From IMG/VR virus record IMGVR_UViG_3300000553_000004, positions 150,734-214,733 of that record: DNA of 64,000 bases; one strand, 5' to 3'. Of the stretch, positions 700 to 44,016 are shown one piece after another. Numbering within the stretch: the stretch's first letter is position 1; every line of letters begins with the position of its first letter. Under the pieces are notes generated by a model. It had not been told where the DNA came from. It ran no database searches and saw only the letters and a list, made by a program, of their open reading frames with translations. The translations under genes were made by a program, and so were the position numbers.

Positions 700-1012
700 T
701 CATTATGCCCCTCTTCATTCTCCTAATGGTTTTTGGTTGGGGTGGATTCAACGCATTTAGTGGATTCACTTGTTTTATTATTTGTCTTTGTACCGTGTTT
801 TGTTTTTCCTACGAAAAGTAACCTTTAAAAATTATGGCAACTGAATATGTAACAAATGTGGTGGTTAGTCATCACAACACTTGGACGTTGATTAAACACG
901 TCGCAGGTACAATCAATAAGACCGCGCCTATAAAATCGTTTGATACTAATTCATTCGGTTGGGAAAATAGAACACCGCTTGACAAAACTCCATAACATGA
1001 TAAACTGTTGAT

Positions 1013-1984
1013 ATGAAATTAGACCACATTGAAAATCTTTATAGGCCGGAAGCCCAAATCATCTTGATGTTTCGTGAGTGTTATGCCCTGGAAAAAATTC
1101 ATGGCACGGCGGCGGGGTTCTCATTCGACCAATCGACAAACGAAATTTCATTTCAATCTGGAGGCGAATCATATTCACGTTTCGTTTCTCTATTCAATCA
1201 AGAACAAATAATCCAAGGTATCAAGAATCTGGGAATTCCTGTTGACAAGATTATTGAAATTTATGGTGAGGCGTATGCAGGTAGCCAACAAGGAATGTCA
1301 CATACCTACGGAAAAACCTTAAAATTTATCGTTTTCGACGTTAAGATTGGAGATAATTTCTTGAATGTTCCTGACGCCGAGGATGTGGCAAAGAAACTCG
1401 GGTTGGAATTTGTTTACTATACCAAGGTTCCATTGATTCGAGCAGTTCAAAACGAATTGGGTATTTTAGTTACTGAAACCTATCTCGGTGGTATTGACGC
1501 ACAACGTGACTTACCGAGTATGCAGGCAGTTCGCAACGGAGTTTCTACGCCTGAAGCCTTTACAAAGGGCGAAGGCCCGAAACGTGAAGGTGTTGTTCTC
1601 CGCCCATTGGTTGAGATGACTCTGAACAACGGAAGTCGTATCATCACCAAACACAAGGGAGATGCGTTTAAGGAGACTGCCACCGCACGTCCTGTCGTCG
1701 ACCCGTCCAAACTGATTGTCTTGGAAGAGGCGACAGCCATCGCAAATGAATGGGTCACAAATCACCGATTGGGACATATTTTACAGAAAATCCAACCGGT
1801 CTATCTCAAAGGCGAAATTCCCATCTTTGATATGTCACAAATTCCACAAATAATCACGGCAATGACCAATGACGTGATTCGAGAAGCCGAAGGTGAAATC
1901 GTGGTATCTGACGCCGCTAAGAAAGCCATTGGCAAAAAGGCAGTCGAATTGTTCAGGGGATATCTGAATTCTCAAGTCAAGTAA
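1013..1984 (+). CDS. RNA ligase, Rnl2-like nucleotidyltransferase
   Basis: Motif I EKIHG, then EIYGE, FIVFDV, REGVVLRP, ITKHK; leaderless start after promoter at 977. Confidence 0.85.
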   Translation: MKLDHIENLYRPEAQIILMFRECYALEKIHGTAAGFSFDQSTNEISFQSGGESYSRFVSLFNQEQIIQGIKNLGIPVDKIIEIYGEAYAGSQQGMSHTYGKTLKFIVFDVKIGDNFLNVPDAEDVAKKLGLEFVYYTKVPLIRAVQNELGILVTETYLGGIDAQRDLPSMQAVRNGVSTPEAFTKGEGPKREGVVLRPLVEMTLNNGSRIITKHKGDAFKETATARPVVDPSKLIVLEEATAIANEWVTNHRLGHILQKIQPVYLKGEIPIFDMSQIPQIITAMTNDVIREAEGEIVVSDAAKKAIGKKAVELFRGYLNSQVK

Positions 1985-1985
1985 A

Positions 1986-2291
1986 ATGAGTAAGCCAAAA
2001 TTCAAAAGAGGTGAGACTGTAACCGTTCTTTCTAGGAAAAATTCCAAGGGAGAATGTTCGTGGGAGAATAATCATGTAGGCGGCAATGCTATTATCACCG
2101 GTGATAACAAACTGAAAAATAAGATTGACACATTATGTTATACTTTAGAATTACCACATCAATATTCTCTCCTTTTGTTAAATGAAGATGGTGGGCCTGA
2201 TAGGACGTGTAAATGGTTTGAGGAAAAATTTCTCGAATCATATTGTACAAATGTGGAGAGAGGATTGAAATTTCTTGAACCGTTGAATTAA
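1986..2291 (+). CDS. hypothetical protein (paralogous to 9559 and 9951)
   Basis: Shared KPKF(K)xG(E/Q)TV start and YC(T/S)NxxRG end. Confidence 0.65.
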   Translation: MSKPKFKRGETVTVLSRKNSKGECSWENNHVGGNAIITGDNKLKNKIDTLCYTLELPHQYSLLLLNEDGGPDRTCKWFEEKFLESYCTNVERGLKFLEPLN

Positions 2292-2407
2292 TTTATGTTA
2301 CTCACCGCTCTTATTATTGTGGTTATGTGTTGTCTTCTGTTTTCTTGTGAAGAATTTGGTGGATAACCAACGCTTGACTTATCGTGAGATGAGTATATTC
2401 TTTCTAT

Positions 2408-2926: not shown

Positions 2927-2927
2927 T

Positions 2928-3485: not shown

Positions 3486-3702
3486 AATTTGACAACAACT
3501 CGGGTCTGATAATCGAAGAACTTCGCAACGGCTTCTTGGGCCGTAAAGTCACCTATTTTCTCTGGCATGGTAAACGTCTCATCGCCACGTCGATTGATAG
3601 AACAAATTGGAAGATGGCTTCATGGGCGAATAAGGTTACTAATGTCAGCCTGAAACAAATCGATGATGGAATGTTCAAAGGATTGTCACAAACTATTGAC
3701 GT

Positions 3703-8987: not shown

Positions 8988-8997
8988 CATCATCGTT

Positions 8998-14193: not shown

Positions 14194-14251
14194 GAACTGC
14201 GCTTCGGGAATTACGGGTCGCGGAACTGCCTTCCGGCTTGGTTCGCCTCAC
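14194..14251 (-). ncRNA. small RNA family A copy 1
   Basis: Minus-strand promoter 14252-14287; transcript GTGAGGCGAACCAAGCCGGAAGGCAGTTCCGC, near-identical to copies at 27031 and 35758. Confidence 0.6.
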
Positions 14252-14331
14252 AACAATAGATTATCAGGTTTTTATAAAACGTCAAGCCTTGCAGCTCTAC
14301 GCTTGACTGTAAAGGATGTCCTGATAAGATA

Positions 14332-16191: not shown

Positions 16192-16745
16192 GTTGATACG
16201 GTTTGTTTAGGTTGAACCGAGAAAAATAAACTGGTGGAGTCAGAAGCATAAGGTTGACAGAGTGGAACCAGAAACTCTGTTGGAGCGAGTGTAGATTATT
16301 AGGTCCCAATCGGGTTGGGTGAACAAAAACCCTTCAAACCGACAGGAACGGCGGCCTTTCCAGTCACGATAGGATTGTCTAAGGCCGCCGTCTTCAATTG
16401 ACCGAAGGTGAGTCAGCTCAAAATGACGATAACTTAGGATGGAATAGGTTCACAAAAATCCCCCCAATGAGGGTAGGAGTGCGAGCCTGTTTCATGCGTT
16501 GTTCACTTTATCGATAAAGTGATATGAGTTCTCGTAGTATCGACCACCCGCTTTGACGCTTCGTATCAATAGATTAACAGAGTTATTATAATCGTCAAGC
16601 CTTGGAAACTGTGAGGTAATGTCGAAGATAATGGGAAGAACAATCGGTAATGAGATTGACTTGAAACCCAAGGAACTTGGTCAGTCTGATTAGACCGATA
16701 CAACGATGGTAAATCCAGTTGTAAACGTCACTGTCAACCAATGGT
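16192..16745 (+). ncRNA. candidate large structured ncRNA
   Basis: Own promoter (16156-16185), no credible ORF, many helices incl. 11-bp acggcggcctt/aaggccgccgt. Confidence 0.5.
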
Positions 16746-19078: not shown

Positions 19079-19246
19079 AATGTTCCTTTCAGATAATAAG
19101 TATGTTGTTGAACATCTAAACGTTAAGAAATCTTTGGAATTCATTTTTATATTGACGCTTGACTTCTTAAAACAATGGTATAGAATTTTGTCATAGTTAA
19201 AAACAACAACTACAACAAACAAACAAACAAAAACAAATAACAAACT

Positions 19247-19789: not shown

Positions 19790-19885
19790 TCCGACTCTGT
19801 TGTGACACAAGGCCCGCAGTTTAACGACTGTGGGTCTTTTTCTTGCGACGCTTGACAATTCTTAAATGTTTGGTAATCTACGTAT

Positions 19886-19947
19886 GGGTGGTTAGCTCAT
19901 TGGCAGAGCCCTTTGTATGATGGGTTCGATTCCCATACCATCCACCA
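19886..19947 (+). ncRNA. tRNA-like RNA lacking anticodon arm (G3-U70, A73, CCA)
   Basis: GGGTGGT/ACCATCC acceptor, GCTC/GAGC D arm, 10-nt linker, ATGGG-TTCGATT-CCCAT T arm, ACCA; own promoter. Confidence 0.75.
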
Positions 19948-21855: not shown

Positions 21856-22830
21856 GGCTTGATTTTTGGTAAACATCGTATAAATTAAACCTATGTTTGA
21901 TAGAATCCATTTGACCAGAACCGAACAGGCCGTTTCAGATTCGTTGGCTCATGCCCGAATTCAACAGGATTACATACATGACACGTTGAGGGTGGTACAT
22001 CACGGCAGTAATGATTGGGACGGTGACGTGGATATTAACATCTATGAAGAACACGTTGCCGATGCTGTAAAGGTCGTTGAAGACCACACTGGTACAAAGT
22101 GTACGTCAACGTTTTTGAAAATCGGTAAGAAAACTGGCCGAAGGATTTGGAAAATCACCGCAAAGGGATACATCAATGGTCCGTGTGGCCACTACGCCCG
22201 AGTTGAATGGGAAAAGAAAAATGGAAAGCCGTATCCGATGGAACTTGTGGTCGAGGCTTGACGGTAAACAAATAACTGTTAGTATAACAATACAAAATTT
22301 ATGCCATGTCGTTGTGATTATCCCGATACGTGTAACGAGGACCCAGGTCTTCGTGATTCCGCCAACAAATCCACCCGCGCAGCTTGTGACATGAGGACAA
22401 TCCTCCGTCGTCACAATCTCGAACTTGAATTGACGCTCGAGACTCGGAAGTGGATTAAGAAACACGATGACAAAGATGCCGCTCGCATCGCCGTGGAAAC
22501 TCGGAAAGGGTTGCGTCAACGTGTCAAACAAGCCGCACTCGACAAGCTGAGTCTCGAAGAGCGCCGTGTGTTGGGGTTGTGAGGTATGAATCGTTACACC
22601 GAGTTGACCTGTAAGTTTTGGCCCCATTACAATATCACGGCAGGCTTAACAAACCTTGCCTTTTGGTTGCCATCTGTTATATATTGGACACCGCCGGTAA
22701 TATTTCCAATTATAACATCGTCAATGGGAATGCTTTGTGTCTATTGGGGAATACAGGGAATTCTACATCATCGTCACCAGCGTAAACAACGCTTGACTAA
22801 AAGTAATCCGTTGGTATAGTTATTTGTGTC

Positions 22831-22909
22831 GCGGATGTAGCTGAGTTGGATTTCAAGCAGTGGTTTTCTAAACCACGTTACGTGGGTTCAAATCCCACCA
22901 TCCGCACCA
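22831..22909 (+). tRNA. tRNA-Arg(UCU)
   Basis: Cloverleaf; GTGGT-TTTCTAA-ACCAC; CCA encoded. Confidence 0.9.
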
Positions 22910-22916
22910 ATTTTAA

Positions 22917-23015
22917 TGGCCTTTAGCTCAATGGCAGAGCAGAGCACTCACGCGGGCAGTTACGCCTGCATCGTTAATGCTTTGGTTGACAGTTCGAGTC
23001 TGTCAAGGCCAACCA
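22917..23015 (+). tRNA. tRNA (probably CAU, Ile2/Met) with 24-nt insertion in anticodon loop
   Basis: TGGCCTT/AAGGCCA acceptor, canonical D and T arms, 31-nt anticodon loop CTCA[24 nt]TAA. Confidence 0.75.
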
Positions 23016-26974: not shown

Positions 26975-27031
26975 ATTAACGATAAAGTGATTTGGGGTGG
27001 CGGAACTGCCTTCCGGCTTTGTTCGCCTCAC
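26975..27031 (-). ncRNA. small RNA family A copy 2
   Basis: Promoter 27032-27067; GTGAGGCGAACAAAGCCGGAAGGCAGTTCCGC. Confidence 0.6.
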
Positions 27032-28023
27032 ATAGATAATTTATCAAAAGTATTGCAGAAGTCAAGCCTCACCCGATTTTCACAGGTGAGGCTTGGTGAG
27101 AGTGTGGATTAAATTTTGTTCTGTTTTCGACAGACATACAGGGCCTGAAAGACGCCCATCATTTTAGGAAATGTCGTAATAAGATAATCACGAGCGATTT
27201 CAGGATTTTTCAATCCATAAACAAATCGTGGCAAGCCACGGGAATCATCACGGGCTGCCAATTCTAGTTGGCGTTCGGCTGTTGTGAGAGGACGACGGAA
27301 AAGGCCGACCTTGCGAGCGATGGCCGGAAACCCCTTCGAGTATTCACGCCACATCGGGTCAGGCCGTTCATTATCCGAACAGATTTTGTTCAACCGGCTG
27401 CCGACATAATTGACATCGTAATTCATGTTCAACACTGAACTCATAGTCGAACAGAGAATAACGACGGTGGGCGCCGTCTGGCAAAATGTCATCACGGCCA
27501 ACGTGGTATCTCGCCATGGCAATGAATAAGGAACTTTTTGTCTCGAACCAGTTAATTCACGACTGTTACGAAGTATGTTCACTGTTTGGTTGTCTTCCAT
27601 AAAAGATAATGGAAGATTGGTGTTATTTTGACACATATTATTTTTTGTTTGTTGTTTGTTTGTTACGAAATCAATTTATCAAAGTTTGTAGAAATGTCAA
27701 GCGACGTCAGGGAACTGAAATAGTTCCTGTAAGGTGGGAGTGAACCCAAGTTCGGTGGTGATTTTATTCTTCTTCACCATGAGACGTGTGGCGATTTGGC
27801 GAGCCATATAGGCCGGACGTTCACCATCTTGGTAAAGGTTTTCAGGTGAGAGTTGTCCTTCAATGTCCCGTAGTTCATCAAAGAGTTGTTCTTTTCGTGT
27901 AGCAGTCATGTCTGTAAATTATCAAAACATTGTAGTAAGTCAAGCGGTGGTTAACCGAGGCTTGACAATATTAATATGTTTGGTAACTTATCAATATGAA
28001 ATACATCACTGTTTCACCAACAC

Positions 28024-28809: not shown

Positions 28810-28874
28810 TTAACGTTAAAGGAATTAACGCACTCGCCGATACCCTACTCTTGGTTTTTGACAACCTCATCAAC
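28810..28874 (-). ncRNA. small RNA family C copy 1
   Basis: Promoter 28875-28910; GATGAGGTT…AACCAAGAGTAGGGTATCGGCG…TGCGTT shared with 39186. Confidence 0.5.
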
Positions 28875-28904
28875 AAAGATAGGTTAACAAATTGTTTAGG
28901 GAAG

Positions 28905-31004: not shown

Positions 31005-33056
31005 ATTTTTGTTTTGTTGTTTGTTTTATTAACGACTTCAATTTATCACAGTAATCTATTTAGTCAAGCGGTCAGTCCCACCACATACGAGTCACATTGT
31101 CGAAGGGATATTTGTGTTCAATGTAATCACAATAATCGGCCCCACACACGTTTTTAACCTTGCCGGTGACATACATACAGACACTTAACTCACGAGCGAG
31201 GATGATTTTACAATCATCGGGGAGGGATTCCAACATGGACGGTGTGAATTCGTTGTATTCAGGACAAGCCTCTTCCATGATTCGGATTGCGGTCACTTTG
31301 TCCACGGGTGAGACAGCCCGAAAATCCAATTGACGAGTCTCTTCGTTGTAGGCAATCAGAACCGAACGGCGAACGGTTTCATTGATGAATTTTTGGTTAA
31401 TAATCATGACTTAAATTTATCAAATGTTTATTGTAAGTCAAGCCTCATACATCTACGCTTGACATTATGGTAATGTTTGATATTTTAACCACATGAATTT
31501 GAAGTCCACTATTACCGATGTTTGTTCCGCCATCCTCACTCAACATCTTGGGTCCATTGAAAACGTCGTGATTGATTCGGCCTGTAAGACTGTTATTACC
31601 GAGTGGAATACTCATCACACCGAACAGATTGACACTCGCCACGAACTCGCCGAGTGGAGTCGGACGATGGATGGTATCAGAACCGAACAGCTCGGATGTG
31701 GTAATTGTGAACATTGTTCATGTGGCGAATCCCATTAATTTTATGTCAGTACAATACATTGAAAACGAAATCGTTCATCTCAATGGTGAACTCGTAACCG
31801 TAGTCCGTCAATTCACTCAGACTCAGAGTGATTCATGGAACGGTCAACTATCCGTAATCAAGGTCGGTGAGAATCGGTATAAGTATCTCATCACTGCGAT
31901 GGATGGCAAGTCGACGTTATTTTCAATGTGTGATGTTCTCCGAGTCGAACCGTCTCTATCAGTCAGTGTGGGAACTTCCCAAATAATCCGACTGAAAGGT
32001 TCAATGTAATGTGTATTATTGTTTTATTCGCTCTATTAGGTTTACCGATAGGCGCAGTCGGTTTGTTCTGTCTCATCTACTTCTTCTTTTTCATGAGTCG
32101 GTGACGCTTGACATTAATTAAATGTTTGGTATTTTAATCACATGAATAACAATTTACTTTTACAGGCTCAGAAATGGTTGGCTACTATCGGCATCAAATC
32201 CGAAGCATGTCAGACCTTTCTCAAAGTCAGTCGCAAAGATGTCGACGACAGTGGCCTTTTCGAAACCGATTCATTTCTTCGTGAATTGAAACTTGGTATC
32301 GGTAGTAATAAACTCTATCTCGGATTGGATGATGTGGCGAACTATCACATCAAAGCATTCTAACCCCACACGGGGAGTGGGTACCCCCAGCGCATTACCT
32401 TTTTGGGACCCCCAGCGCTGTTTCACCCGCTACCCGCGCCTGAATACTGCGCTGGTGACGCTTGACAATTAAAACAAACAATGTAGTATTTCAATATGAA
32501 TGAATACATCGTCAATCTCACTTGGTCTGTAACCGGCTCGGTCAAGGTCAAGGCAAACTCACCCGAAGAAGCTGCCGAACTAGCTAAGGGCCCTACGGTT
32601 TCCTTGCCCGAATCCAATTATTATCTCGAAGATTCAATCACCTGTAACCCTGATGCCGACGTCCGGTTAATATCGTAATACTATGAAACAACTACTGACA
32701 TGGTTACGTAAACGTACACCGTCGTTTATTTGCGCAGTAATAGGTCACGGGCATCTTTCAACAGTCGAACCGTATCAAACGATATGGACATACAAAAATT
32801 ATAAGGGACTGACCGTAGAGGATTTAACGAAGACCGATAACGTATCCGAAGTATCAGTCCGCGGAAAGTTAAAATGTAAACGTTGTGGACAGATTTCCAT
32901 CGGTAACGTTAAATATAAAAACTATTGTTAGTTTAACGTTAAAGGACACCAATACACAATAAACCATATGGCGCCTAATAGGCGGTCATACATGCGCAGA
33001 ATTGTGGCGTACTTGAAGTATATTACCATTTTTTATCGCAACGTCAAGCGCCAGGA

Positions 33057-33132
33057 GTTAACGTTAAAGGAATTAACGCAGGCCTTGGTCCCACATTCTC
33101 GGCGCCTTTCGGTCGGCCTCATCATCTCTCAC
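33057..33132 (-). ncRNA. small RNA family C copy 2
   Basis: Promoter 33133-33168; GTGAGAGATGATGAGGCCGA…CGCCG…TGCGTT. Confidence 0.5.
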
Positions 33133-33345
33133 ATGAATAGTTTAACAAATAAGACCGAGAAGTCAAGCGGTGGGAAAACGTGTGAGTTTTATTGGCAAAG
33201 TTTGGATACGTCCAAACACAATCCAATGGTTCACTCACATGAATAGTTTAACAAATAAGACCGAGAAGTCAAGCGGTGGGAAAACGTGTGAGTTTTATTG
33301 GCAAAGTTTGGATACGTCCAAACACAATCCAATGGTTCACTCACA
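33128..33345. repeat. exact tandem duplication, 106-bp unit (promoter + hairpin RNA)
   Basis: ctcaca at 33128, 33234, 33340; identical units. Confidence 0.92.
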
Positions 33346-34404
33346 ACCCGTAAGAGTTAGCCAGTCTGAATCCGTTAACAGAGGTCGAGCTGAGGAAGTG
33401 GTTATCTAGAAACCTTAAACTGTCATTTCGTTAAACATAATACGGAAACCGAACTGCTTTTGTGTCCCTTACATTGTCTTTCCTTTACACCATCAATCTA
33501 TCATACTATCCAAAAGAGTCAAGCGTGGTCTGACACCGCTTGACAATAGTTAAAACAATGATAGTATTCAATTATGAACGGAAAGATTAAATTCGACGAA
33601 CTGAGTGACTTGGCAGAGTTTCTCAAACACTTCACCGGTAGCTCGGCTATCTTTGAAGTCCGCCAAGACATGACGACGAAACGGTGGATACTTGAATTTA
33701 CCGGAGGCTTTTAATTATGAAAATTACAACAGTTGTCGAGAATAATCCGGCGAACGTATGAAAACCGGCCGCAAAGTCGCCGTCATTACATATATCCAAG
33801 TCATGATGTTCAAGGCTTGACATTAGTTAAACATTTGGTAAACTTTTTATATGAAGAAATTCTGTATGGTTGCCATTTCCAACCTGTCATTCACAAGGGG
33901 AAAGCGGTGGGCTGAAAAGTATGTGGAGTTGCGAATGGAATTTCATCGTAAACACGGCCACGGGTTGATTCTGTCAACGTGGCATGGCGTCGAATTTTTC
34001 GACAACGTGTTAAAGGCCCTCAATGGCGATATGTGTAAGGAACCCAAAGGGGAATACCGAAATAATTTCCTCAAACTGATTGAGATTGGTTCGAGGGAGG
34101 CTTGACATTAGTTAAACATTTGATACAATTTCTATATGACAAAAACCACCTTAGTCTTTATTGGGACGAACATCAGCCCGAAAGTCGGCGACATTCTGAC
34201 TGACTTCCGAGGCGATACCGAAATTTTCTGCTCGTCGAATCCGCCCTACGAGCCCGAGGACAGTCTCAACCGCGGCGCCAAGGTATACACCCGCAAGGCC
34301 GGAAAGACAAGTCAAAATCACAGTTATCCTTCCGTGTATGGGTTGGAATTTGTCCTGACGCCCGAGGCTTGACAATCCAAGACAAATGTGGTATGATTCA
34401 GCCA

Positions 34405-34845
34405 ATGAAAAAAGAATTGTCTGCAATGATTTTCCCGGTTGAGAACTATACCGATAAAATCCATTTTGGTGTTAAAAGTCAAATGGAAAAATATTCCCAC
34501 TTGTCTTTTACCATCGGACAGCTCAAGCCATATCTTCAAAGTGGTTACCCTTGGTTGAAAGATTTAAGTGAACGTCAAGACATTCTTCTCAAACAAATTA
34601 TAAAAACGGGGCTTGCCAAATTGGTTCAATTGGGTATGGTTAAGAAAGTCACAAGTAAGGTTCAAGTGGAACCACAATGGCAATGGGCTTCAAAGGTCGC
34701 CGAGAGTGGCTACACGAATATCACCAACGAGAACGAAGTCGCACAGACTGACGAAGCCCGCAAGGCCGCCAGTCGTCGGGCAATTGGTGGACGTTCCCTT
34801 CACAGACTCAACGGTAAAGCTAAGCTCGGACAGCTACACGCTTGA
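34405..34845 (+). CDS. hypothetical, possibly winged-helix
   Basis: Start after promoter at 34366; GLAKLVQLGMVKKV. Confidence 0.6.
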   Translation: MKKELSAMIFPVENYTDKIHFGVKSQMEKYSHLSFTIGQLKPYLQSGYPWLKDLSERQDILLKQIIKTGLAKLVQLGMVKKVTSKVQVEPQWQWASKVAESGYTNITNENEVAQTDEARKAASRRAIGGRSLHRLNGKAKLGQLHA

Positions 34846-34875
34846 CAATAGTTAAATATTTGGTAGTATTTCTAT

Positions 34876-35223
34876 ATGAAATTACTCACCAAACAAATCG
34901 AAAAAGCTCTGGCCAATCCCACCCTCAACGGCCAAAACGCTCAATATCCCATCTGTAAGTTTTTCAATCCGTGTGGAGCTGCAACGTGGCTCATCTTCGC
35001 CCGTGAAACTGGCGACTCGGCAGACATCCTTTGGGGTGTGGCTGACCTCGGGTTCGGTTGCGTCGAATATGGGACAATCAGCTTGTCAGAGCTCCAAAAT
35101 CTCCGTCTCCCTTTCGGTCTGACCATTGAACGTGATTTACATTGGGCGCCCAAGACTCACGCCAACGGTGACAAGTGGAACCTCGCCGACTATCTGAAAC
35201 TCAACTCTCTGTCGTCAATCTGA
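34876..35223 (+). CDS. DUF2958-like protein
   Basis: KFFNPCGAATWL…DLGFGCVEYGTISLSEL…GLTIERDLHW. Confidence 0.8.
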   Translation: MKLLTKQIEKALANPTLNGQNAQYPICKFFNPCGAATWLIFARETGDSADILWGVADLGFGCVEYGTISLSELQNLRLPFGLTIERDLHWAPKTHANGDKWNLADYLKLNSLSSI

Positions 35224-35757
35224 CACCGCTTGACAATTCTCAAACATTTGATAAAATACTTTTATGATTAATTTCATTATCCCAAAAACCTCCATGTGTG
35301 TCGTCATTTCCTATCGGGACGGCAACAAAACCGAAACTCTCATTCCTACTCCGTGTAACAACGCGGATTTGCGGAATACAATGTTGATGAAACATCGAGT
35401 GGGCTTCTCCGAGATTCGGGGAATCAAGTCCGTCGAGGCCGGCGAGATGTTTCGCGGCCGGTGACACGCTTGACAATTACCGAATGTTTGGTAACTTGTT
35501 TAGGTAAGAAGAATTTAAAAATCATGGTTGTTGGTTGGTTCGGGGCTTTTCTTTTTTCTCCCCGATGGTCCCTATATTTTGGGAAACCAACCAACAATCG
35601 AATCTGGTGGCTGTTTGGGACTATCCGTGATATAATCGTGGGTCGCACGGGACCTCGTTACCAAAACTCTAATAGCTACCGTTACACGGAGTCAAGCCTC
35701 ATTCCGAGTATATGGAGTGGGGCTTGACTCCTGCAAATCTTTTGTTAAACTATTCAT

Positions 35758-35815
35758 GTGAGGCGAATCAAGCCGGAAGGGAGTTACGCGACCCGTAATT
35801 CCTTTATCGATAAAG
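35758..35815 (+). ncRNA. small RNA family A copy 3
   Basis: Promoter 35722-35757; GTGAGGCGAATCAAGCCGGAAGGGAGTTACGC. Confidence 0.6.
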
Positions 35816-36506
35816 ATGGGACGCTTGACAATAGTTAAATGTTTGGTATATTGTATTTACATATGACACCTGAACAGACCAAACTAATCTCCGACTTGGC
35901 CGCCGACTTGAAACCAATGGTTAAAGATATTGAGGCCGGCATACCTACCACCCAAAACAATTACGGCCGTTATGGGTCGCTCATCAGTCAATTGTCAAAG
36001 GGTGACAAACGAGTCGGCGCCATCATCGCTCTGGCGCTGATTGAAGCCGGTGCGAATCGTGTTGGTGTTCAAAACGCACTGAAACTCTTTGTGTAAGGCT
36101 TGACATTTCTTTAACATTTGATACACTTTCTATATGAAAAAACTATTCAAACAAAAACCGCGCAACCAAGTTGGGTATCGTTACAGTAACAATTACATTG
36201 GAACTGTCACTGTCACGCCGGAAAATCTGAAACGACTCTCGGAGTTTCGTCAAGCCGTCCGTGAAATCGGTCGCTCGACTTCGATTCGTGGCCGGTCAGC
36301 CAATCGTCGGGCTCTTGCCGAACGCCATGGTTTGATATATAACATGGTCTTGTCAGACGTTCCCGCCAAGTTCGCAACGTCGCTCGATGTTTACTGGCGT
36401 TAATAATTTGTCAAGCGTTGTGTCGCAGTAAACGTCACCATTATTCAGTGTGATGATTGAAAGATGCAACGCTTGACAATAGTTAAAACAATGGTATTCT
36501 TTGGTT

Positions 36507-36941
36507 ATGAATAACACAATCGACCTCGACAAACAATTTTTCTTCGGTGGTAACGCCACCTTCACCGTTGAATCCGAAAAATCGGGCGAACATAAGACCT
36601 ACAAAATCCGCCGGACGAAGCCCACCCCGCGTTTCCCGAACCCGTCGCTCATGTTGTCACTCCTCAGTGGCCCGTGTAATGAAACGAATTACAGTTATAT
36701 CGGTATCGTTAACGAAGAAACCGGCTCGCTCCGTCTGACCAAGGCGAGTAAACGGAATGAACAGAGTCCCGACGTTTTAACCTTCAATTGGTTAATGAAA
36801 CATCTCTTTACCGATAAAGTTCTAATGAATGCAAAGGTACACCACGAAGGGAAGTGTGGAGTCTGCGCAAGAAAATTGACAGTTCCCGAATCAATTTTGA
36901 GAGGCATAGGTCCCGAATGTTGGAGCCGGATTGCCGGTTGA
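36507..36941 (+). CDS. DUF6011-like Zn-finger protein
   Basis: CGVCARKLTVPESILRGIGPEC. Confidence 0.8.
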   Translation: MNNTIDLDKQFFFGGNATFTVESEKSGEHKTYKIRRTKPTPRFPNPSLMLSLLSGPCNETNYSYIGIVNEETGSLRLTKASKRNEQSPDVLTFNWLMKHLFTDKVLMNAKVHHEGKCGVCARKLTVPESILRGIGPECWSRIAG

Positions 36942-37014
36942 GGCTTGACAAGTCCCCGTGTATAACAGCGGGGATTTTGTCCTGCGGTAAACTTTCGGGC
37001 TAAAAATCAATGCA

Positions 37015-37069
37015 GGTGTAGTATCGACGTTCCGCTTGTTCAGCTCTCTTTTGACTCCGTATGTCTCAC
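37015..37069 (-). ncRNA. small RNA family B copy
   Basis: Promoter 37070-37105; GTGAG…AAGCGGAACGTCGATACTAC. Confidence 0.5.
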
Positions 37070-38736
37070 ATGGATACTATAACAAACTATCCCGCCGAGT
37101 CAAGCGTCGTAGAGTGAGGCTTGACATTCCTTTAACATTTGATACACTTTTTATATGATTAAAGGAATTACAATTTTAAGCCGCGATGGAAAACATAAAG
37201 GTCACTATACAGGCGGCGTCCGGCCCTGTCAAATGGAAGGTTGTCGTGGGAGTCGAATGGCTATCAGATGGGACGATGGAAAACTAACATATCCTTGTAG
37301 CACTTTGACTAAAGCCATTTCGTCGACCACGCATAAAATAATGTGACGCTTGACATTCCTTTAACATTTGATAATCTATCTATATGATTTTAACAGCTAA
37401 CGAGGAAACTCGGTTTAATTTATTGGAGGAAAAGTTTTCCAAGGGACAATGCACCGAGCCTGAAATTATCGAACTGCAAGAACTGCTCGACCGTTATTAC
37501 AACAATTGTCACGCTTGACATTAGTCAAACATTTGATACACTTTCTTTATGACAATTTCACAACTCGCCAAATTGAATAAGAAACACGGCGGCCATTTTT
37601 TCGACCATGACAACATGAAGGTTGCCGGTGATACACAGAAAAGTTATCGGATTGAATCCGACGAACTGAATAAGACCGTGATTCTCACTCGCAAACGGGA
37701 TAACCATCAATGGGAATTTTCCGCCAAGACCGGCCGCGTTACTCACGCTTGACATTTCACCAAACAACCCTATAATCATTTTACATATGCCACCTATCAA
37801 AAAGATGACTTTTAATGAGTGTATGGACGGTTATATCGCCGCCCTCGACACTATCACACAACAACAGATTGACGCCCTCGCCTATATCTTCGGCGCAAGT
37901 GGGTGTGGTTGGACGAAGGAAAAGGCTATCGCCGAATTGGGATTCGAGAAACACGACGCAGGTGATGAACTCGACGACAACGCTTGACATTCCTTTAACA
38001 ATTGATACACTTTCTATATGACAAAATCATACACACACGAACAAGTCACTTATGGGGCCAAGGGCCGCCGGTGGGAATTTACCGCCCCCAATTATCAATT
38101 TGCGACGCCGACGATGCCGGGAGGGGTCATTACGGCCCACAAGGTTGCCCGAGTCATCAACGGCTCGCATAAACGGTGTGACGGGATGGACAATCTGGCG
38201 CGGGGGAAGATGTCCACCATTTTCCACAAGGCCGCAACGGCGGCCAGCCGGAGGATTCGGTAAAAACAAACAAGGGGCGAACGGTGGGCGCAGTTCCACT
38301 TCGCAAGATGAAAACATTAAACGTTCGCCCCTCTTTCTTCACCGCTTGACAATTTTTAAATGGTTGGTAATATTCAGATATGAAAACAACCAAGGAAATC
38401 AAAAACTTTTTAAAGGAAATGGGCCTCACTGTCAGAGGTAACACGGGTACCGGAAAGTCTAAATGGCAATCTTTCCATGTTCCGTCTGACATCATTCCCA
38501 TTAGCCAGCTTCAAGTAATGAAATTCAGTCTGCCGGAGTTTCCGGTGGAGTTTCGCAAACTCTGTATCCGAACGGTTTATCCTGATTCTGAAACTCTTTA
38601 CTCGCAGGACACGGCCGGAAATGTCGGAAAGTATAGCATCGCCATGTTGCCCCACCAATGGGAACACGTCATGGCGGTCTGGCCGCTGAAGTTCATCGCT
38701 TGACATTTCTCAAAACAACTGTAAACTGTCTTTGTC

Positions 38737-39105: not shown

Positions 39106-39185
39106 GGTTCGGTCAATCGGCATCAAGCCTCCCCGAGAAATTGGGCGAGGCTTGACTGCTGCGGTGAATATGTTAAACTTTCCTT

Positions 39186-39249
39186 GTGAGAGACGATGTG
39201 GCTGAAATACGCCGGAGAGTAGGGTAACGGCGGCTGCGTTCGTTTTTTT
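39186..39249 (+). ncRNA. small RNA family C copy 3
   Basis: Promoter 39150-39185; GTGAGAGACGATGTGGC…GCCGGAGAGTAGGGTAACGGCG; T-run after. Confidence 0.55.
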
Positions 39250-39337
39250 GAGTGTATAGGAATGAGACACGCTTGACAATTCATTTAAGTATTGTATTCT
39301 GTATTTGTAAACGGTAAACATCAAAACAAATAACAAT

Positions 39338-39796: not shown

Positions 39797-39802
39797 TTCG
39801 GT

Positions 39803-40501
39803 TCATATTGTAACCAGCCCCGATGAAAGACTCTGGGTCTGGTTTTTTTTCTTTTTATGGGCAAGACTCATTTTAAGTCTTGTTTCTGCTGAACGTTTCT
39901 TTCCCCAATGTGGACTATTAGGACCTGTGTTTACATTTCTTAAATGTTCTTTTTCATTTTCTGTTAGTTTTCTATGTGGTGAAGAATTAGACATTTTTAA
40001 TTTGACTTCATCGGAATATTTTTTGCCTATTTTGGCAATAGACATTTTCTCTCTTGCATAATCACTAAAAAATTGTTCGGTTGATTCAAATTTTAGATTG
40101 TAACATTTGTCTTGTTCATTTCTGGCAATGTCAAGATATTTTTGTTCTACTAATATTCTTTTATTAGGTTCGGTAATTTCTACTATTAGAAATTCAAAAT
40201 TATCCTTACCATATTTATTCCACGCACGCTGTAAGTAATCATTATAGTGTTTATTTTCAATTAAACAATTCTTATGTTCTCTCCATCGTCGTTGAATACT
40301 ATTAGCACTTCCAACATAATACTTGCCATTAGTCTTGTTTACTATCTTGTAAATTCCCGATACGTTTCTTTTCGTGGTAGTCGGCAAGTTTTTCTTTTCT
40401 AATTCTGTCTTTGTGTCGTTCGTAAAATCGTTTGGCACGTTCATTGTTTCGTTTTCTTTGTTCGTCAAGTGTAAGTTTGTCGTTTCGTTTTGGCATATCA
40501 T
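39803..40501 (-). CDS. GIY-YIG homing endonuclease
   Basis: SGIYKIVNKTNGKYYVGS; NUMOD3-like repeats. Confidence 0.88.
   Translation of the reverse strand: MICQNETTNLHLTNKENETMNVPNDFTNDTKTELEKKNLPTTTKRNVSGIYKIVNKTNGKYYVGSANSIQRRWREHKNCLIENKHYNDYLQRAWNKYGKDNFEFLIVEITEPNKRILVEQKYLDIARNEQDKCYNLKFESTEQFFSDYAREKMSIAKIGKKYSDEVKLKMSNSSPHRKLTENEKEHLRNVNTGPNSPHWGKKRSAETRLKMSLAHKKKKNQTQSLSSGLVTI
40329..40496 (-). CDS. small basic endonuclease-associated protein (overlapping)
   Basis: MPKRNDKLTLDEQRKRNNERAKRFYERHKDRIRKEKLADYHEKKRIGNLQDSKQD. Confidence 0.65.
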   Translation of the reverse strand: MPKRNDKLTLDEQRKRNNERAKRFYERHKDRIRKEKLADYHEKKRIGNLQDSKQD

Positions 40502-40559
40502 AAGTTATCCTTTCATTTAATAAGTATAATATGAAATTTGATAACGATAGAAAATTTAC

Positions 40560-40626
40560 AATTATCGTTAAAGGAATCAACGCACTCGTAGTATCGACCT
40601 CCCGCTTTTACGCTTCGTTATCTCAC
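40560..40626 (-). ncRNA. small RNA family B copy
   Basis: Promoter 40627-40662; GTGAGATAACGAAGCGTAAAAGCGGGAGGTCGATACTACGAG, near-identical to 16564 copy. Confidence 0.55.
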
Positions 40627-41335
40627 ACCAATAGTTTAACAAATAACCCAGATAAGTCAAGCGTCGGAGAGTGAGGCTTGACAATTTCTATTAGTAATAT
40701 AAACTACCTATATGAAAAAGTTCACGCACGTCGGTCATGTGGTTGGAACGGGAGACTTATATCCCAGCTACAACACCAAGCTCCGCGAAACTAAAACTCT
40801 GTGGGTGACGCCCAAGGGCATCAAGTTCCGCAAGTCTGATGGGTTCAAGCCGAATGATGAATGGCCGAAAACTCACTTGGACTTGGCCACGGTTATGTCG
40901 CAGGTCACCATCTGATATTGATTGAGGCTTGACGTTTCTTTAACATTTGATACACTTTCTATATGAAAAAAACAACTGACCAACTTATCGCCGAATACAA
41001 ATCCGAATTCATCCGCACCAACGGAAAAGAAATTTTCTGCTGCTGTTACACCAACGGCTGGTTCCGTGTCGGTAACTCGGATAAAGTTCGCCGTGTCAAA
41101 TTCGAGGAAATGATTGCCACTTTACAGAGTCGCCCGACCGTCAGCGACCGCACCGAAATGGTGAATGGTGTTCCGACCGTCATCAAGGCTAGCCAACACG
41201 TCGTCCGGTCCTATCTGGCGCCGCACTCCGATATTGTCGAAGAGCGTGACACTCCGCACTGCTGCTCCCCTTCTAACGAAACGTATTGGTCCATGTGAGG
41301 CTTGACAATACTCAAACAATCTATATCATTTAAAC

Positions 41336-41794
41336 ATGAGAACAAAATACTTCAAAAATATACGGGCATTTGACGCCATCAAACGGCTCGCTAACGATAG
41401 TCTCACCGCCCCATACGAGCAGACCGATTCGTGGAAGCCGTCCGCATACTCAATCTCGGAAGTATACAACCGCAACGACTTCCAACAAATCACTCGCCAA
41501 GAGGCGCGGAAGTTACGCCCGACGGCCTTCCGCACTCCGTTTTCTAAGGCTTGATTTCTTAAACAATTGTGGTAATCTAACCATATGAGAACAAAATATT
41601 TTACGAAACAATCGTCCTTCATCCGTGTGTGGCGAATCAGGAACAATTTCGTCGCATACTTTTCACGCGGACGGGGTTATGTGTGGTGTCGGTCGGCGTG
41701 TGATAACCTCGAAGACTGTATCGCCGGCAGCCTGACTCCCGTCACCCGCGACCAAGCTCGCAAGATGGAACCCAAGGCTTTCCGCAAGGCTTGA
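41336..41794 (+). other. two paralogous ~70-aa ORFs (41336-41554, 41585-41794; third member 43302-43520)
   Basis: MRTKYF…(I/V)TRxxARKxxPxAFR; each with own promoter. Confidence 0.7.
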
Positions 41795-43969
41795 CATTCC
41801 TTTAACATTTGATACACTTTCTATATGAAAAAGAAACTATCCAAAGCTCTTCAGGCCGCAATCAAACGTTATCTTGACAATCGTGACAATCGTGACAGTC
41901 AATCGGCAACGTTCGTCTGGGACAAGCCGGCTGACCAAAAAGCAATCTCTGAAATTGCTTTCACTGAAAAGTCAATGGTTCGTGTCGAACAATCATCTGG
42001 TCGTTGGTGGTTCACCGTGAAACGTGGCGCCCAACGTTGGACGTTCTACGCCCATGAAGACAATTACACGCAGACACTCACCGGCACGCAGGCAACGTCC
42101 TGTAGCCCGCTGACAACACTGTTCGGCAGGGCTTGATTTAGTTAAAACTTTCGGTAAACTGGCTTTATGAGAATGTTATCATCTACGCCGCCCCCGGAAG
42201 AGGAAACTCAAGCAGACCGTGACCGGCTGACTCGTCAAGGCCCGCCACTAGGCAAGCATCGTATCAATCTCGGGCCGCTCGGTTATGTGACCAAAGGCCA
42301 CTGGGGACGCAAGCCTGATTGGGCATTCGCAAATTGTGTCTTGGTGCTGGAGTTGGTGCTGGGTTCGGCTATGTGGGTTCGGTATCCTCGCCATGATATC
42401 GTCGCTTGACTTGTGGTAAACTTTCTATAAATTAAGTGTATGAGTTGCCCTTGTCCATGTTGTAAGACAGATTCCGACAATTTCGGTAAGCCACCGGTAA
42501 ACTGTCCAAAATGTAATAAACCAATGTGGAAGTGTTCCACAAGTTATGGCGCCGTTTGGGCGTTGCCGCCTATGTTAAAACATTTACGGGCTGGTAGTCT
42601 TCATGCTATTGTTTATGAATGTTACGAATGTAATGTGATTATACCAACAAATGTGAATCGTCACGATTATCATAAACGTCGTGACCCTGCTGATGGTGAA
42701 CTAAAACGTATGCTCACGGTAACATTATACCATGAGCCTGATTTTCAGACTTTTACCAAGTTTGGGCCATTTGCTAAGTCCGCTTGACTTTCTACAAACT
42801 TTCTATAAATTAAGTGTATGACGAAGACCGCACAAGAAGCTGAAGCACTCTCCAAGAAGCTACGGGTTGCTTTCGAGAAAGTCCAGAACAAGGAACACTG
42901 GAAGAATCCGATTGATGCCGTCATTCACAAGTCTGAAATGGATATCACCGGCGATGCCATTCAATTCTTCACCGGAACACAAGCCTTTTTCAGCTCCAAC
43001 AAACTGACTTTGGCCGAATGTGAGGCCGGCATGGTTCGTGTCACCGCTGCCGGTTACTACGCCGGCCCATGTAATTGATTTATGTTAATCACCAAACAAT
43101 TTGACGAAATCATCGTCGAACGAACACACTGCCCAAGTTGTCGGGCGCCAAGAGGCCATAACTGTTGCTCGGCCTTCGGTAACTTTGTCTCTCCACACAA
43201 AGACCGTGTGAAGGATTTTCAAAAGAGGTTCGATGTCAAGTTCACGGTGCTACCAAAGCTGAAGGCTTGATTTGTCAAAACAATCGTGGTAATCTAACAA
43301 CATGAAACGAGCCAAATATTACAAGATAGCCGGACTGTTCGCAGTGTTGCTTTGTCCTGCTGGTGGTGACAAGGGCTTCACTGTCCATGCTAACGGATTG
43401 CTTGGCGAACATTACAATCTGTCAACCGACTTCCCGAATGGTGGTATCAGCCGGATTAGTCGTGACGAAGCCGAACGGATTGCCCCTCGCTCAGCTCTCC
43501 GTCAATACAAGATAACATGACACTCGCCGACTTACAACATTTCAAATATGCTGGTGGTTATTTCAGAGACGCCAGAGTGCCAAAGGGCAAGACAGCTCCC
43601 GTGCTTCATGGTAGTGAAATCATTGAGGTTATACAGAAGCACCTGAATCCTCCAGTCGAACGACCTGGCAATGACCAGGCTTGTGTGGATGCTCAATGCC
43701 CTTGATACGCTTGACTTGAGCAAAGTTCTTGGTATCTTATCTATATGAAATTGATTCTCACCAAACACGCCGACCATGTTGAGGTTGAAGTGATGGACGG
43801 TAGCCTTCGCCTTCATTGCTACACTTTCAACAACATGAAACTTGCCGAGGCCTTTTGCACCGGCTTCCACTGTGCCAAGACTGTAATCAACGGCATGGTT
43901 CAATCTCTGCCACTCGGTTACGAGAAGCGGAAGGCTTGACCGGTGGGATTGGTGTGATATGATGTGGGT

Positions 43970-44016
43970 GTGAGGTTCCGATGGGTATGTTCCCTTACCG
44001 AAAGGTAGAGCCTCAA
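43970..44016 (+). ncRNA. small three-way-junction RNA
   Basis: Promoter 43934-43969; GAGGTTC/GAGCCTC enclosing GGG/CCC and TACC-GAAA-GGTA. Confidence 0.45.

What the first reader, a model, noticed from the sequence alone, without database searches (positions are those of the whole stretch)
977..43970. Promoter-bounded gene cassettes: the -35 box is also the Ala-stop of the upstream gene, and mRNAs are leaderless
Seen: >80 GCTTGAC promoters with a 16-nt spacer, with ATG typically 6 nt after the -10 (no room for an SD). In at least 17 ORFs the last codon and stop are GCT-TGA, i.e. the next promoter's -35 (e.g. 21893 VEA*, 33851 REA*, 34136 PEA*, 34405 LHA*, 37549 THA*, 37787 DNA*, 38380 FIA*, 41336 SKA*, 41585 RKA*, 41825 GRA*, 42167 IVA*, 42440 KSA*, 43082 LKA*, 43745 RKA*, 27697 DVA*, 28905 LAA*). 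Known: T4-type phages shuffle early genes via repeated promoter cassettes. Inference: this is a self-punctuating cassette array in which recombination at the promoter supplies the start, stop and expression signal for any captured ORF. The imposed C-terminal Ala might also act as a weak ssrA-like degron.
Basis: partly seen in the sequence, partly recalled or inferred. Interest (0 to 1): 0.75.

Follow-up and report, generated by a model that had tools for sequence, protein, structure and literature searches.

The report
Leaderless promoter-per-gene array in phage
A large bog-lake phage carries about 85 small early genes and RNAs in 43 kb, each behind its own near-consensus promoter placed so that the transcript should begin at the ATG, and packed so tightly that the previous gene often stops inside the next promoter; this is an unusual, probably new variant of the promoter cassettes known from T4-type phages.

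Summary
GCTTGAC occurs 97 times in the window, against 4.8 expected. Between 977 and 43970 there are 82 promoters of the form YRAS-GCTTGAC, 16-nt spacer, TGn-TAnnnT.

- In 46 of them an ATG opening a real ORF (median 86 aa) starts exactly 6 nt after the -10, which is the expected +1. No Shine-Dalgarno motif occurs anywhere in the genome.
- The previous ORF's stop sits at two positions: the TGA of TTGAC, giving a GCT-TGA ending (17 promoter-started ORFs; all 16 reader examples verified), or T[GA]A one base before GCTTGAC.
- The same anatomy recurs in relatives from bog and peat metagenomes. One of these is a complete 365-kb genome. Their proteins are 60-70% identical to the window's and most cassette genes differ.

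- The GC, and so the C-terminal Ala, is promoter-intrinsic. The degron idea has no support.
- Leaderless expression is strongly inferred but unproven, because no RNA data were listed.
- Promoter-mediated shuffling has real but indirect support: promoter-limited near-identical repeats in front of unrelated genes, two indels running exactly from GCTTGAC to GCTTGAC, and one solo -35 scar.

There are no stem-loops, terminators or integrase. It works like T4 PeSL cassettes but is not a member of that family. The host is unknown.

The parts
977..43970 (.). Hyperplastic early-type region: 82 promoter-headed units (61 on +, 21 on -), median spacing 373 bp (273 bp in 33.5-44 kb)
33815..34105 (+). Typical unit. 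Promoter has GCTTGAC at 33815-33821 and -10 TAAACT at 33839-33844. The leaderless ORF 33851-34105 (84 aa) ends REA*, and its TGA (34103-34105) is the TGA of the next -35 (GCTTGAC 34100-34106).
34100..34846 (+). Two further butt-jointed units: ORFs 34136-34372 (PEA*) and 34405-34845 (LHA*), each stopping in the next -35. The LHA* ending and the following promoter are conserved in relative L175.
34840..35227 (+). One whole unit (promoter plus the DUF2958 ORF 34876-35223) that is present here but absent between the same two neighbour genes in relative L175. The indel runs from GCTTGAC to GCTTGAC.
36507..36949 (+). Conserved anchor ORF (144 aa, phrog_20259) ending TGA + G + GCTTGAC (the stop + 1 nt class). 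The GCTTGAC at 36943-36949 has no -10 behind it, so it is a solo -35 scar.
36950..37981 (.). Block of about 1.03 kb: a minus-strand ncRNA unit, a divergent promoter pair, and four small ORF units starting at 37155, 37384, 37549 and 37787. It lies between GCTTGACA at 36943 and GCTTGACA at 37982. In relative L158 the two flanking genes are separated only by one promoter, and L160 holds different content there.
37119..37158 (+). Member of a subfamily of 9 near-identical 40-nt promoters, with GCTTGAC starting at 33815, 34100, 36098, 37119, 37348, 37513, 37982, 40927 and 41789. They drive unrelated proteins, and the homology stops at the promoter edges.
37099..37125 (.). Back-to-back divergent promoter pair, GTCAAGC-N13-GCTTGAC. 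Other pairs are at 14281-14307, 27939-27966 (N14), 31437-31463, 33518-33544 and 40656-40682.
41300..42787 (+). Run of five leaderless ORFs (starting at 41336, 41585, 41825, 42167 and 42440), each ending xxA* in the next -35. Two of these -35 elements are the variant GCTTGAT.
35758..35822 (+). ncRNA family A unit, a transcript predicted to start GUGAGGCGAA. Copies also lie downstream of the promoters at 14287(-) and 27067(-). The first ~45 nt are identical between the window copy downstream of the 14287(-) promoter and relative L158.
39186..39257 (+). ncRNA family B unit: a variable hairpin, then AGAGUAGGG, then UGCGUU..AUUCCUUUAACGUUAA. Copies at 33058-33132(-) and 28810-28884(-). Conserved in G006, L158 and L175, with one compensatory pair.
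19885..19947 (+). tRNA-like element with acceptor stem, D-like and T-arm sequences and CCA but no anticodon arm. It begins at the predicted +1 of the promoter at 19850.
22791..23012 (+). Promoter unit driving tRNA-Arg (22831-22906, 4 nt after the predicted +1) and a second, 96-nt tRNA (22917-23012).
19193..19246 (+). CA-rich leader without a Shine-Dalgarno motif (ACAAACAAACAA type) in front of ORF 19247-19789. Similar leaders at 27637-27666(-), 31005-31033(-) and 39307-39337(+).
39803..40501 (-). GIY-YIG/NUMOD3 homing-endonuclease-like gene inside the array. Paralogous DNA at 18663-19103 and 59096-59329.

Best explanation
The window is the early, host-takeover (hyperplastic) region of a distantly T4-related jumbo phage from an anoxic bog lake. 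Its family has genomes of about 365 kb, and the host is unknown.

Transcription (inferred from sequence). The host's housekeeping RNA polymerase recognises about 85 strong promoters in this window. Each has an extended -35 (YRAS-GCTTGAC-w), a 16-nt spacer and an extended -10 (TGn-TAnnnT).

Leaderless expression (inferred from geometry). The -10 is fixed 6 nt before the ATG, so transcripts should start at the A of AUG and be translated as leaderless mRNAs.

One promoter per gene (inferred). This phage uses no Shine-Dalgarno sites. Genes that lack their own promoter are either abutted to the previous stop or have CA-rich leaders. A 5'-terminal AUG is therefore one of the few ways to start translation, which would explain why nearly every small gene has its own promoter.

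Packing (shown). Units are butt-jointed without terminators. The upstream ORF runs up to the next promoter and uses promoter-intrinsic bases for its stop. One class uses the TGA of TTGAC, which forces a [K/N/H/D/E]-Ala C-terminus. The other uses T[GA]A ending on the conserved A four bases before TTGAC.

Other cargo (shown). The same promoters also launch tRNAs with almost no 5' leader and several conserved small RNAs.

Turnover (partly shown, mechanism inferred). The 40-nt promoters are the only repeated DNA in the array. They probably serve as portable homology for recombination that inserts, deletes and swaps whole promoter-to-promoter units.
For: - Promoter statistics and position matrix.
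- Orientation always matches the downstream gene or RNA.
- ATG at exactly +6 in 54 of 114 promoters, with T at -1 and A at +1; 53 of 54 ORFs are at least 30 codons long.
- tRNA and tRNA-like 5' ends lie 0-6 nt from the predicted +1.
- No Shine-Dalgarno motif: GGAG upstream of 2 of 94 conserved genes, AGGAG upstream of none.
- No sigma-factor gene in this contig or in the complete relative.
- Terminator-like sites are not enriched: 24 found against 19.1 expected.
- Stop positions are bimodal in three genomes.
- The A and S before GCTTGAC are conserved in 85 and 115 of 116 promoters, including divergent pairs where no ORF ends.
- The architecture is replicated in G006/G011 and L158.
- Promoter-limited repeats.
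- 42 promoter pairs are identical at 22 or more of 30 variable positions, against 0.36 expected, and their genes are unrelated.
- Unit-precise indels and a solo -35.
Against: - No transcription start site data exist: no RNA run was listed. The leaderless claim rests on spacing alone.
- Without terminators, read-through transcripts must also exist, and internal initiation on AU-rich promoter sequence cannot be excluded.
- The host, and therefore its promoter and translation rules, is unknown.
- The closest relative covering the array has only 63-71% protein identity. Most breakpoints therefore cannot be placed to the base, and any gene-wise indel would fall at a promoter because promoters fill the gene boundaries.
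- Comparing promoters of orthologous genes between genomes gave no signal.
- Four population samples showed no structural variants.
Confidence: 0.7

Rival explanations
1. The sites are real promoters and the layout reflects compaction only. Strong selection for near-consensus promoters and for minimal intergenic DNA produces the stop-in-promoter overlaps. Gene turnover happens by ordinary illegitimate recombination and homing endonucleases, with selection keeping only gene-precise outcomes. The promoters play no special recombination role.
For: Every gene boundary is a promoter, so unit-wise indels are expected under any mechanism. The comparison with G001 at 70-80% nucleotide identity shows block edges at promoters no more often than at gene starts in general. 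The orthologue-promoter test was uninformative. GIY-YIG endonuclease genes lie in the array.
Against: Near-identity at all 30 non-consensus positions among 9 promoters, with no flanking homology and unrelated genes, is not explained by consensus selection. There is a solo GCTTGACA scar, and an inserted block is flanked by GCTTGACA on both sides.
Confidence: 0.25
2. The promoters are real, but translation is mostly from read-through polycistronic RNA. The A/T-rich -10 and discriminator in front of each ATG would act as an unstructured, Shine-Dalgarno-independent ribosome landing site, so the mRNAs are not functionally leaderless.
For: There are no terminators between units. The phage clearly translates genes that lack a Shine-Dalgarno motif, from CA-rich leaders or by stop-start abutment such as TGAtttATG at 43076-43084.
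Against: A landing site would not need an invariant 6-nt distance between the -10 and the ATG with T at -1 and A at +1. Units on the minus strand and divergent pairs cannot be served by read-through. The same geometry places tRNA 5' ends at the predicted +1.
Confidence: 0.15
3. The repeated 40-mer is primarily a mobile or recombination element (like an integron attC site or a MITE), not a promoter.
For: It is the only repeated DNA in the array and bounds the indels.
Against: It has bipartite sigma70 geometry with an extended -10, and conservation is limited to the consensus positions across relatives. Its orientation is tied to the downstream gene. There is no tyrosine integrase, no inverted-repeat or stem-loop signal and no terminal repeats.
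Confidence: 0.03
4. The imposed C-terminal Ala is a selected degron that shortens the life of early proteins.
For: About 30% of cassette proteins end in Ala. The phage encodes its own tmRNA, whose tag ends AVA.
Against: The GC that encodes the Ala is as conserved where no ORF ends. The endings are K/N/H/E/D-Ala, with only one AA. By general knowledge, ssrA-type recognition needs a hydrophobic LAA-like tail. Two thirds of the cassette proteins lack the Ala.
Confidence: 0.05

Closest known systems
PeSL (promoter-early stem-loop) cassettes of T4-type phages RB49 and phi1 (Arbiol et al. 2010, PMC2839356)
   Same: Dozens of repeated strong sigma70-like early promoters are concentrated in a hyperplastic region, mostly in front of small ORFans. 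The upstream stop codon lies at the cassette edge. The cassettes are the shared homology between otherwise unrelated genes and bound the indels between relatives.
   Different: There is no stem-loop or terminator. [quoted passage not shown] There is no Shine-Dalgarno motif: the cassette ends at the ATG, which lies at +1. The stop is often inside the -35 itself. The same cassettes also drive ncRNAs and tRNAs. Mini-circles were not demonstrated.
Leaderless genes with the -10 adjacent to the ORF (Deinococcus-Thermus, PMC12340547; lambda cI; middle and late genes of Thermus phage phiYS40, Sevostyanova et al. 2007, known to me and listed in that paper's references)
   Same: The -10 element lies a fixed few nucleotides before an AUG, there is no Shine-Dalgarno motif, and a phage uses the mode on a large scale.
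   Different: Here the promoters have a strong, extended -35 (early type, host holoenzyme alone) rather than -10-only promoters. Each gene is a separate butt-jointed unit. The host is not known to be Deinococcus-Thermus: the environment is a cold bog lake and GC is 38%.
Clustered early promoters of T4, T5 and SPO1-type phages (general knowledge)
   Same: Many near-consensus host-type promoters drive small host-takeover genes at one genome end or region.
   Different: Those genes have leaders with Shine-Dalgarno sites and intergenic spacers. No stop-in-promoter rule has been described for them.
Integron gene-cassette arrays
   Same: An array of small, unrelated, exchangeable single-gene units bounded by a repeated element.
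   Different: There is no integrase and no attC-like inverted repeats. Every unit carries its own promoter, whereas integron cassettes are promoterless.

Membership tests
T4-type PeSL regulatory cassettes | Repeated strong sigma70-like early promoters concentrated in a hyperplastic region upstream of ORFans | tested here: met
   82 promoters in 43 kb. Most downstream ORFs have no Pfam or PHROG function.
T4-type PeSL regulatory cassettes | Stem-loop (terminator or attenuator) as part of each cassette | tested here: not met
   Terminator-like sites: 24 found, 19.1 expected. Folding of 70-nt promoter segments gave a mean z of -0.44 against -0.09 for controls.
T4-type PeSL regulatory cassettes | [quoted passage not shown] | tested here: not met
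   The upstream positions are Y-R-A-S-G-C. The ATG lies 6 nt after the -10, and GGAG-type motifs are absent.
T4-type PeSL regulatory cassettes | Indels and replacements between relatives bounded by the cassettes | tested here: inconclusive
   There are two clean GCTTGAC-to-GCTTGAC indels and one solo -35. However, the relatives have only 60-70% protein identity, and promoters occupy nearly all gene boundaries.
T4-type PeSL regulatory cassettes | Mini-circles formed by recombination between neighbouring cassettes | not testable with these tools
   Only assembled contigs were available. One contig in run X12 joins the sequence upstream of the 40927 promoter to the 36134 gene, but this could be an assembly artefact across a 37-nt shared stretch.
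Leaderless mRNA genes | -10 element ending about 6-7 nt before an AUG start codon, with no room for a leader | tested here: met
   ATG at exactly +6 in 54 of 114 promoters genome-wide, and 46 units in 977-43970.
Leaderless mRNA genes | Absence of a Shine-Dalgarno sequence | tested here: met
Leaderless mRNA genes | Mapped 5' end of the transcript at the A of AUG | not testable with these tools
   No RNA run was listed for this sequence.
Sigma70-type housekeeping promoters | TTGACA-like -35 and TATAAT-like -10 separated by 16-18 nt, optionally with an extended -10 TGn | tested here: met
   TTGAC is invariant by selection. TA...T is in place, the spacer is 16 nt in 126 of 142 sites, and TG is present in about 77%.
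Integron cassette array | Tyrosine-recombinase integrase and attC sites, with promoterless cassettes | tested here: not met
   There is no PF00589 match in this contig or in the complete relative. There is no inverted-repeat signal. Each unit has its own promoter.

The most novel reading that the evidence does not exclude
A family of roughly 365-kb phages has evolved a self-contained 40-nt expression module. It combines an extended -35 holding a stop codon, a fixed spacer, an extended -10, and an ATG at +1. This module would terminate the preceding ORF, start transcription, and supply a 5'-terminal start codon for leaderless translation. As the only repeated DNA in the array, it would also be the recombination substrate through which whole genes and small RNAs are captured, lost and swapped. 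That would make it a terminator-less, leader-less counterpart of T4 PeSLs, used for more than 100 units per genome.
Probability: 0.35. Interest if true: 0.75.

Novelty: new variant of a known kind. Interest (0 to 1): 0.62.

Why it matters
If the predicted starts are confirmed, this would be, to my knowledge, the largest array of leaderless genes described in any phage. It would be a natural example of a minimal 40-nt module that carries stop, promoter and start together.

It would show how a virus organises early expression in a host that ignores Shine-Dalgarno sites. It would also offer a mechanism for the very fast turnover of early and anti-host genes in jumbo phages: only about a third of the units are shared at 60-70% protein identity.

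The module and its YRAS-GC extension are directly testable with synthetic DNA and purified RNA polymerase. The conserved small RNAs launched from the same promoters are new candidates for phage-host interference.

Tried and rejected
- Relatives among named phages. Megablast of 20 kb against the phage collection found nothing. The best named polymerase relative is Microcystis phage Mel-JY01 at 41%, and no paper on it is held.
- Relatives via the array helicase: none found.
- A loose promoter pattern in viral contigs gave mostly single chance hits, but it led to G006.
- Orthologue versus non-orthologue promoter similarity between this genome and G006 showed no signal; the divergence is too great.
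- The closer relative G001 (polymerase 89%) does not cover the window. Its block edges touch promoters at 65.7, 80.5 and 88.3 kb of the contig, but no more often than gene starts in general.
- RNA evidence: none was listed.
- Population variants. Four DNA runs are about 99% identical. The loose ends are mostly paralogous promoter or ncRNA copies.
- Host inference.
  - The phage has no sigma factor, S21 or S1 gene.
  - The genome-collection scan with the promoter pattern gave about 100 single hits. An apparent excess in Elusimicrobiales turned out to be one repeated element of those genomes.
  - NAPRTase look-alikes are commonest in Bacteroidota, which is only a weak hint.
- Known RNA families for the promoter-driven RNAs: none apart from tRNAs. 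Single-sequence folds are unremarkable. A hammerhead-like reading of family B was considered and dropped because the core residues do not fit.
- The integron reading was rejected.
- The degron reading was rejected as unsupported.

Full report
**What the window is**

The window is the last 64 kb of a 214,733-bp viral contig. The contig comes from a Trout Bog Lake hypolimnion assembly (contig name) and is held by many freshwater metagenome runs.

The contig encodes:
- a DnaB-type helicase, a ribonucleotide reductase and a T4-like family-B DNA polymerase;
- a Ro60/TROVE-like protein, NAD-salvage enzymes, and PARP and ART domains;
- a tmRNA and 13 tRNAs in the window, including a CUA-anticodon suppressor.

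The best named polymerase relative is Microcystis phage Mel-JY01 at 41%. Unnamed relatives are common in IMG/VR and in JGI bog and peat metagenomes.

One relative, G011, is a 365,299-bp record rated 100% complete. This contig is rated 62% complete, so it is a fragment of a roughly 340-365 kb jumbo phage genome. No structural genes were found among the large ORFs I scanned.

Motif counts:
- GCTTGAC occurs 97 times in the window, against 4.8 expected.
- It occurs 142 times in the contig, peaking at contig positions 170-195 kb.

Aligning 116 sites gives the consensus Y-R-A-S-G-C-T-T-G-A-C-w-TTT...AAA..T.TG-r-TA-a-a-n-T, then five bases, T, ATG-A.
- The spacer between the hexamers is 16 nt in 126 of 142 sites.
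- TG of an extended -10 is present in about 77% of sites.

Counts of promoters and start codons:
- The window has 81 canonical and 7 variant promoters; shuffles give 0 and 0.8.
- In 54 of 114 canonical promoters genome-wide the ATG starts exactly 6 nt after the -10.
- 53 of those 54 ATGs open 30 or more codons, against 37% of random ATGs. These are real genes, with a median of 86 aa.
- A -10 hexamer at -12 to -7 followed by six bases puts the A of ATG at +1, with the usual pyrimidine at -1 (T in 70 of 116).

For promoters with a long open frame arriving from upstream, the stop falls at two discrete places.
- Class 1 is the TGA of TTGAC, giving ...GCT-TGA.
- Class 2 is T[GA]A ending on the conserved A, followed by S and then GCTTGAC.

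| Genome | Class 1 | Class 2 | Promoters assessed |
|---|---|---|---|
| This contig | 23 | 19 | 80 |
| G006 | 28 | 12 | 72 |
| L158 | 10 | 5 | 21 |

ORFs in the third frame are fewer. They stop a little upstream or run into the spacer.

In the window, 17 promoter-started ORFs belong to class 1 and 7 to class 2.

As a result TGA is 59% of stops in the array, against 33% in conserved genes elsewhere in the contig.

**The GC and the preceding A-S are promoter-intrinsic, not coding by-products**
- S is C or G in 115 of 116 promoters, and A is present in 85 of 116.
- The same bases occur in the six back-to-back divergent promoter pairs (GTCAAGC-N13-GCTTGAC), where no ORF ends.
- The terminal dipeptide of class 1 proteins is therefore dictated by the promoter: codon [A/G/C]A[C/G] followed by GCT.
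- This gives K/N/H/D/E-Ala in 14 of 23 cases here and 22 of 28 in G006.
- That explains the Ala without invoking a degron. Only one protein ends in Ala-Ala.

**Translation signals**
- Upstream of 94 genes conserved with G006, whose starts are confirmed by alignment, GGAG occurs twice and AGGAG never.
- Genes that are not leaderless fall into two groups.
  - Some have CA-rich leaders such as ACAAACAAACAA...ATG (19193, 27666-, 31033-, 39307).
  - Others abut the previous stop, as in TGAtttATG at 43076-43084.
- Terminator-like hairpins are not enriched: 24 found against 19.1 expected.
- The phage and its complete relative encode no sigma70-family protein, S21 or S1.

My reading is that host holoenzyme fires at each promoter. 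In a translation system that ignores Shine-Dalgarno pairing, a 5'-terminal AUG is an efficient way to be translated. This would explain the one-promoter-per-gene layout. That step is inference.

**Not all units are protein genes**

Twenty-three promoters in the window have no ORF.
- Some drive tRNAs whose 5' ends lie 0-14 nt from the predicted +1 (22831, 24673, 57362).
- One drives a 63-nt tRNA-like RNA without an anticodon arm, starting at the predicted +1 (19885).
- Others drive small RNAs beginning GUGAG.
  - Family A is almost identical in L158, although proteins there are only about 67% identical.
  - Family B recurs in the window, G006, L158 and L175 with a compensatory change in its hairpin. 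It consists of a variable hairpin, then AGAGUAGGG, then a 3' hairpin CGUUAA-UUCCU-UUAACG.
- Rfam recognises none of these small RNAs.

**The architecture is a family trait**
- G006 is 189 kb, 34% GC and collinear with this contig in inverted orientation. Its core proteins are 50-80% identical. It has 93 promoters of the same form, dense over about 28 kb.
- G011 has the leaderless form spread over 122-278 kb.
- L158 has 31 promoters in 20 kb.
- The consensus positions are conserved across these genomes. The non-consensus positions are not.

**Does recombination at promoters shuffle the units?**

Evidence within the genome:
- Self-comparison shows that nearly all repeats in the array start 0-6 nt before GCTTGAC and end 39-47 nt after it. 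They cover the promoter through ATGA and nothing else.
- 42 promoter pairs match at 22 or more of 30 non-consensus positions, against 0.36 in column-shuffled controls.
- Nine nearly identical promoters stand in front of nine unrelated proteins.

Evidence between genomes:
- Shared genes stay collinear in the window, L158, L160 and L175, but only about a third of units are shared.
- Case 1. The 144-aa gene (36507-36941) and the 81-aa gene (38018-38263) are separated by a single promoter in L158.
  - In the window they are separated by 1.03 kb holding five units.
  - That block is flanked by GCTTGACA at 36943 and GCTTGACA at 37982.
  - The left copy has no -10, so it is a solo -35.
  - L160 has yet another filling at this position.
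- Case 2. The 146-aa gene ends LHA* in the -35 in both the window and L175.
  - In L175 the next gene is the homologue of 35264.
  - In the window one extra unit sits between them (34840-35227, a DUF2958 protein), running from GCTTGAC to GCTTGAC.

These results fit promoter-mediated exchange as described for PeSLs in RB49 and phi1 (PMC2839356).

They are not decisive.
- Promoters fill almost every gene boundary, and the relatives are distant.
- The only closer genome, G001, does not reach the array, and its comparison is neutral.
- Four population samples were nearly invariant.
- One contig in run X12 joins the sequence upstream of the 40927 promoter to the 36134 gene. That is the junction expected of a circle or a rearrangement between two promoters sharing 37 nt. 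An assembler could produce the same join.

**Comparison with known systems**

The array works like PeSL cassettes but fails their defining features.
- It has no stem-loop or terminator.
- It has no AT-rich upstream region.
- It has no Shine-Dalgarno motif.

It shares the -10-next-to-ORF logic of Deinococcus-Thermus genes (PMC12340547) and of Thermus phage phiYS40. The phiYS40 comparison rests on my own knowledge and on that paper's reference list. Unlike those, it has a strong extended -35 and a butt-jointed, stop-in-promoter layout.

It is not an integron: there is no integrase and no attC-like structure.

**Host**

The host is unknown.
- The lack of Shine-Dalgarno motifs and the Bacteroidota neighbours of the NAPRTase are weak hints.
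- The promoter form is classical sigma70, not the Bacteroidetes -33/-7 type (general knowledge).

**Verdict**

- Promoter identity is very likely.
- Leaderless expression is likely.
- The stop overlap is shown, and it is explained by compaction onto promoter-intrinsic bases.
- The shuffling role is plausible, with some direct examples.
- The degron idea is unsupported.

I class this as a new variant of known kinds, of moderate to high interest.

Noticed in passing
window 35758-35822(+), 14207-14251(-), 26990-27031(-); L158 11265 onward: Small RNA family A, predicted to start GUGAGGCGAA..GCCGGAAGGC... The first ~45 nt are identical between the window copy at 14207-14251(-) and relative L158, whose proteins are only about 67% identical. 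There is no Rfam match.
   Followed up: partly
window 39186-39257(+), 33058-33132(-), 28810-28884(-); L146 5595-5669, 16380-16454, 7124-7198(-); L147 6444-6518; L158 12339-12413(-), 428-502(-); L175 10458-10532(-), 8968-9042(-): Small RNA family B: a variable hairpin with compensatory changes, an invariant AGAGUAGGG, and a 3' hairpin CGUUAA-UUCCU-UUAACG. A third family, with GUCGAUACUAC, lies at 40540-40626(-), 16480-16564(-) and 36985-37069(-). Their function is unknown.
   Followed up: partly
window 19885-19947(+): tRNA-like RNA with a 7-bp acceptor stem, D-like and T-arm sequences and a 3' CCA, but only 7 nt where the anticodon arm should be. It starts at the predicted +1 and was not called by ARAGORN or Rfam.
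   Followed up: partly
window 49979-50371(+): Phage-encoded tmRNA (Rfam score 131 bits) with an unusually long predicted tag, ANLNRLANLDFSFSVNEVEVAVA.
   Followed up: no
window 57068-57143(+): Suppressor tRNA with a CUA anticodon. TAG is rare as a stop: 1 of 61 array ORFs and 7 of 109 conserved genes. I did not test whether TAG is recoded in late genes.
   Followed up: partly
window 39803-40501(-), 18663-19103, 59096-59329: Three paralogous GIY-YIG/NUMOD3 homing-endonuclease-like genes, two of them inside the promoter array.
   Followed up: partly
window 33125-33345(-): A 106-bp promoter-plus-RNA unit duplicated in tandem at 99% identity. This is the only case where homology extends beyond the promoter.
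   Followed up: partly
window 36096-36530 versus 40760-40927 (run X12, record 4): A metagenome contig joins the sequence upstream of the 40927 promoter to the gene behind the 36098 promoter. It could be a recombinant or circle junction, or an assembly artefact across a 37-nt shared stretch.
   Followed up: partly
contig 66724-68298, 91284-93341, 110423-111616, 115167-116471, 97499-99856 (loci L005-L008): Outside the window the phage encodes a Ro60/TROVE-like protein, a glutamine-dependent NAD synthase, an NAPRTase, a PARP-like protein and an ART domain protein. No Y RNA was found by Rfam.
   Followed up: partly
window 22917-23012(+): A 96-nt tRNA match directly after tRNA-Arg. It is long enough to hold an intron or a long variable arm.
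   Followed up: no
G012 and G014 (Elusimicrobiales MAGs; loci L196, L231, L241, L251): These unrelated bacterial genomes carry about 10 copies each of a promoter-like repeat, GCTTGACTCRTTTTTTTTTTTTGATAAATT, followed by ATG at the leaderless distance. It is not related to this phage.
   Followed up: partly
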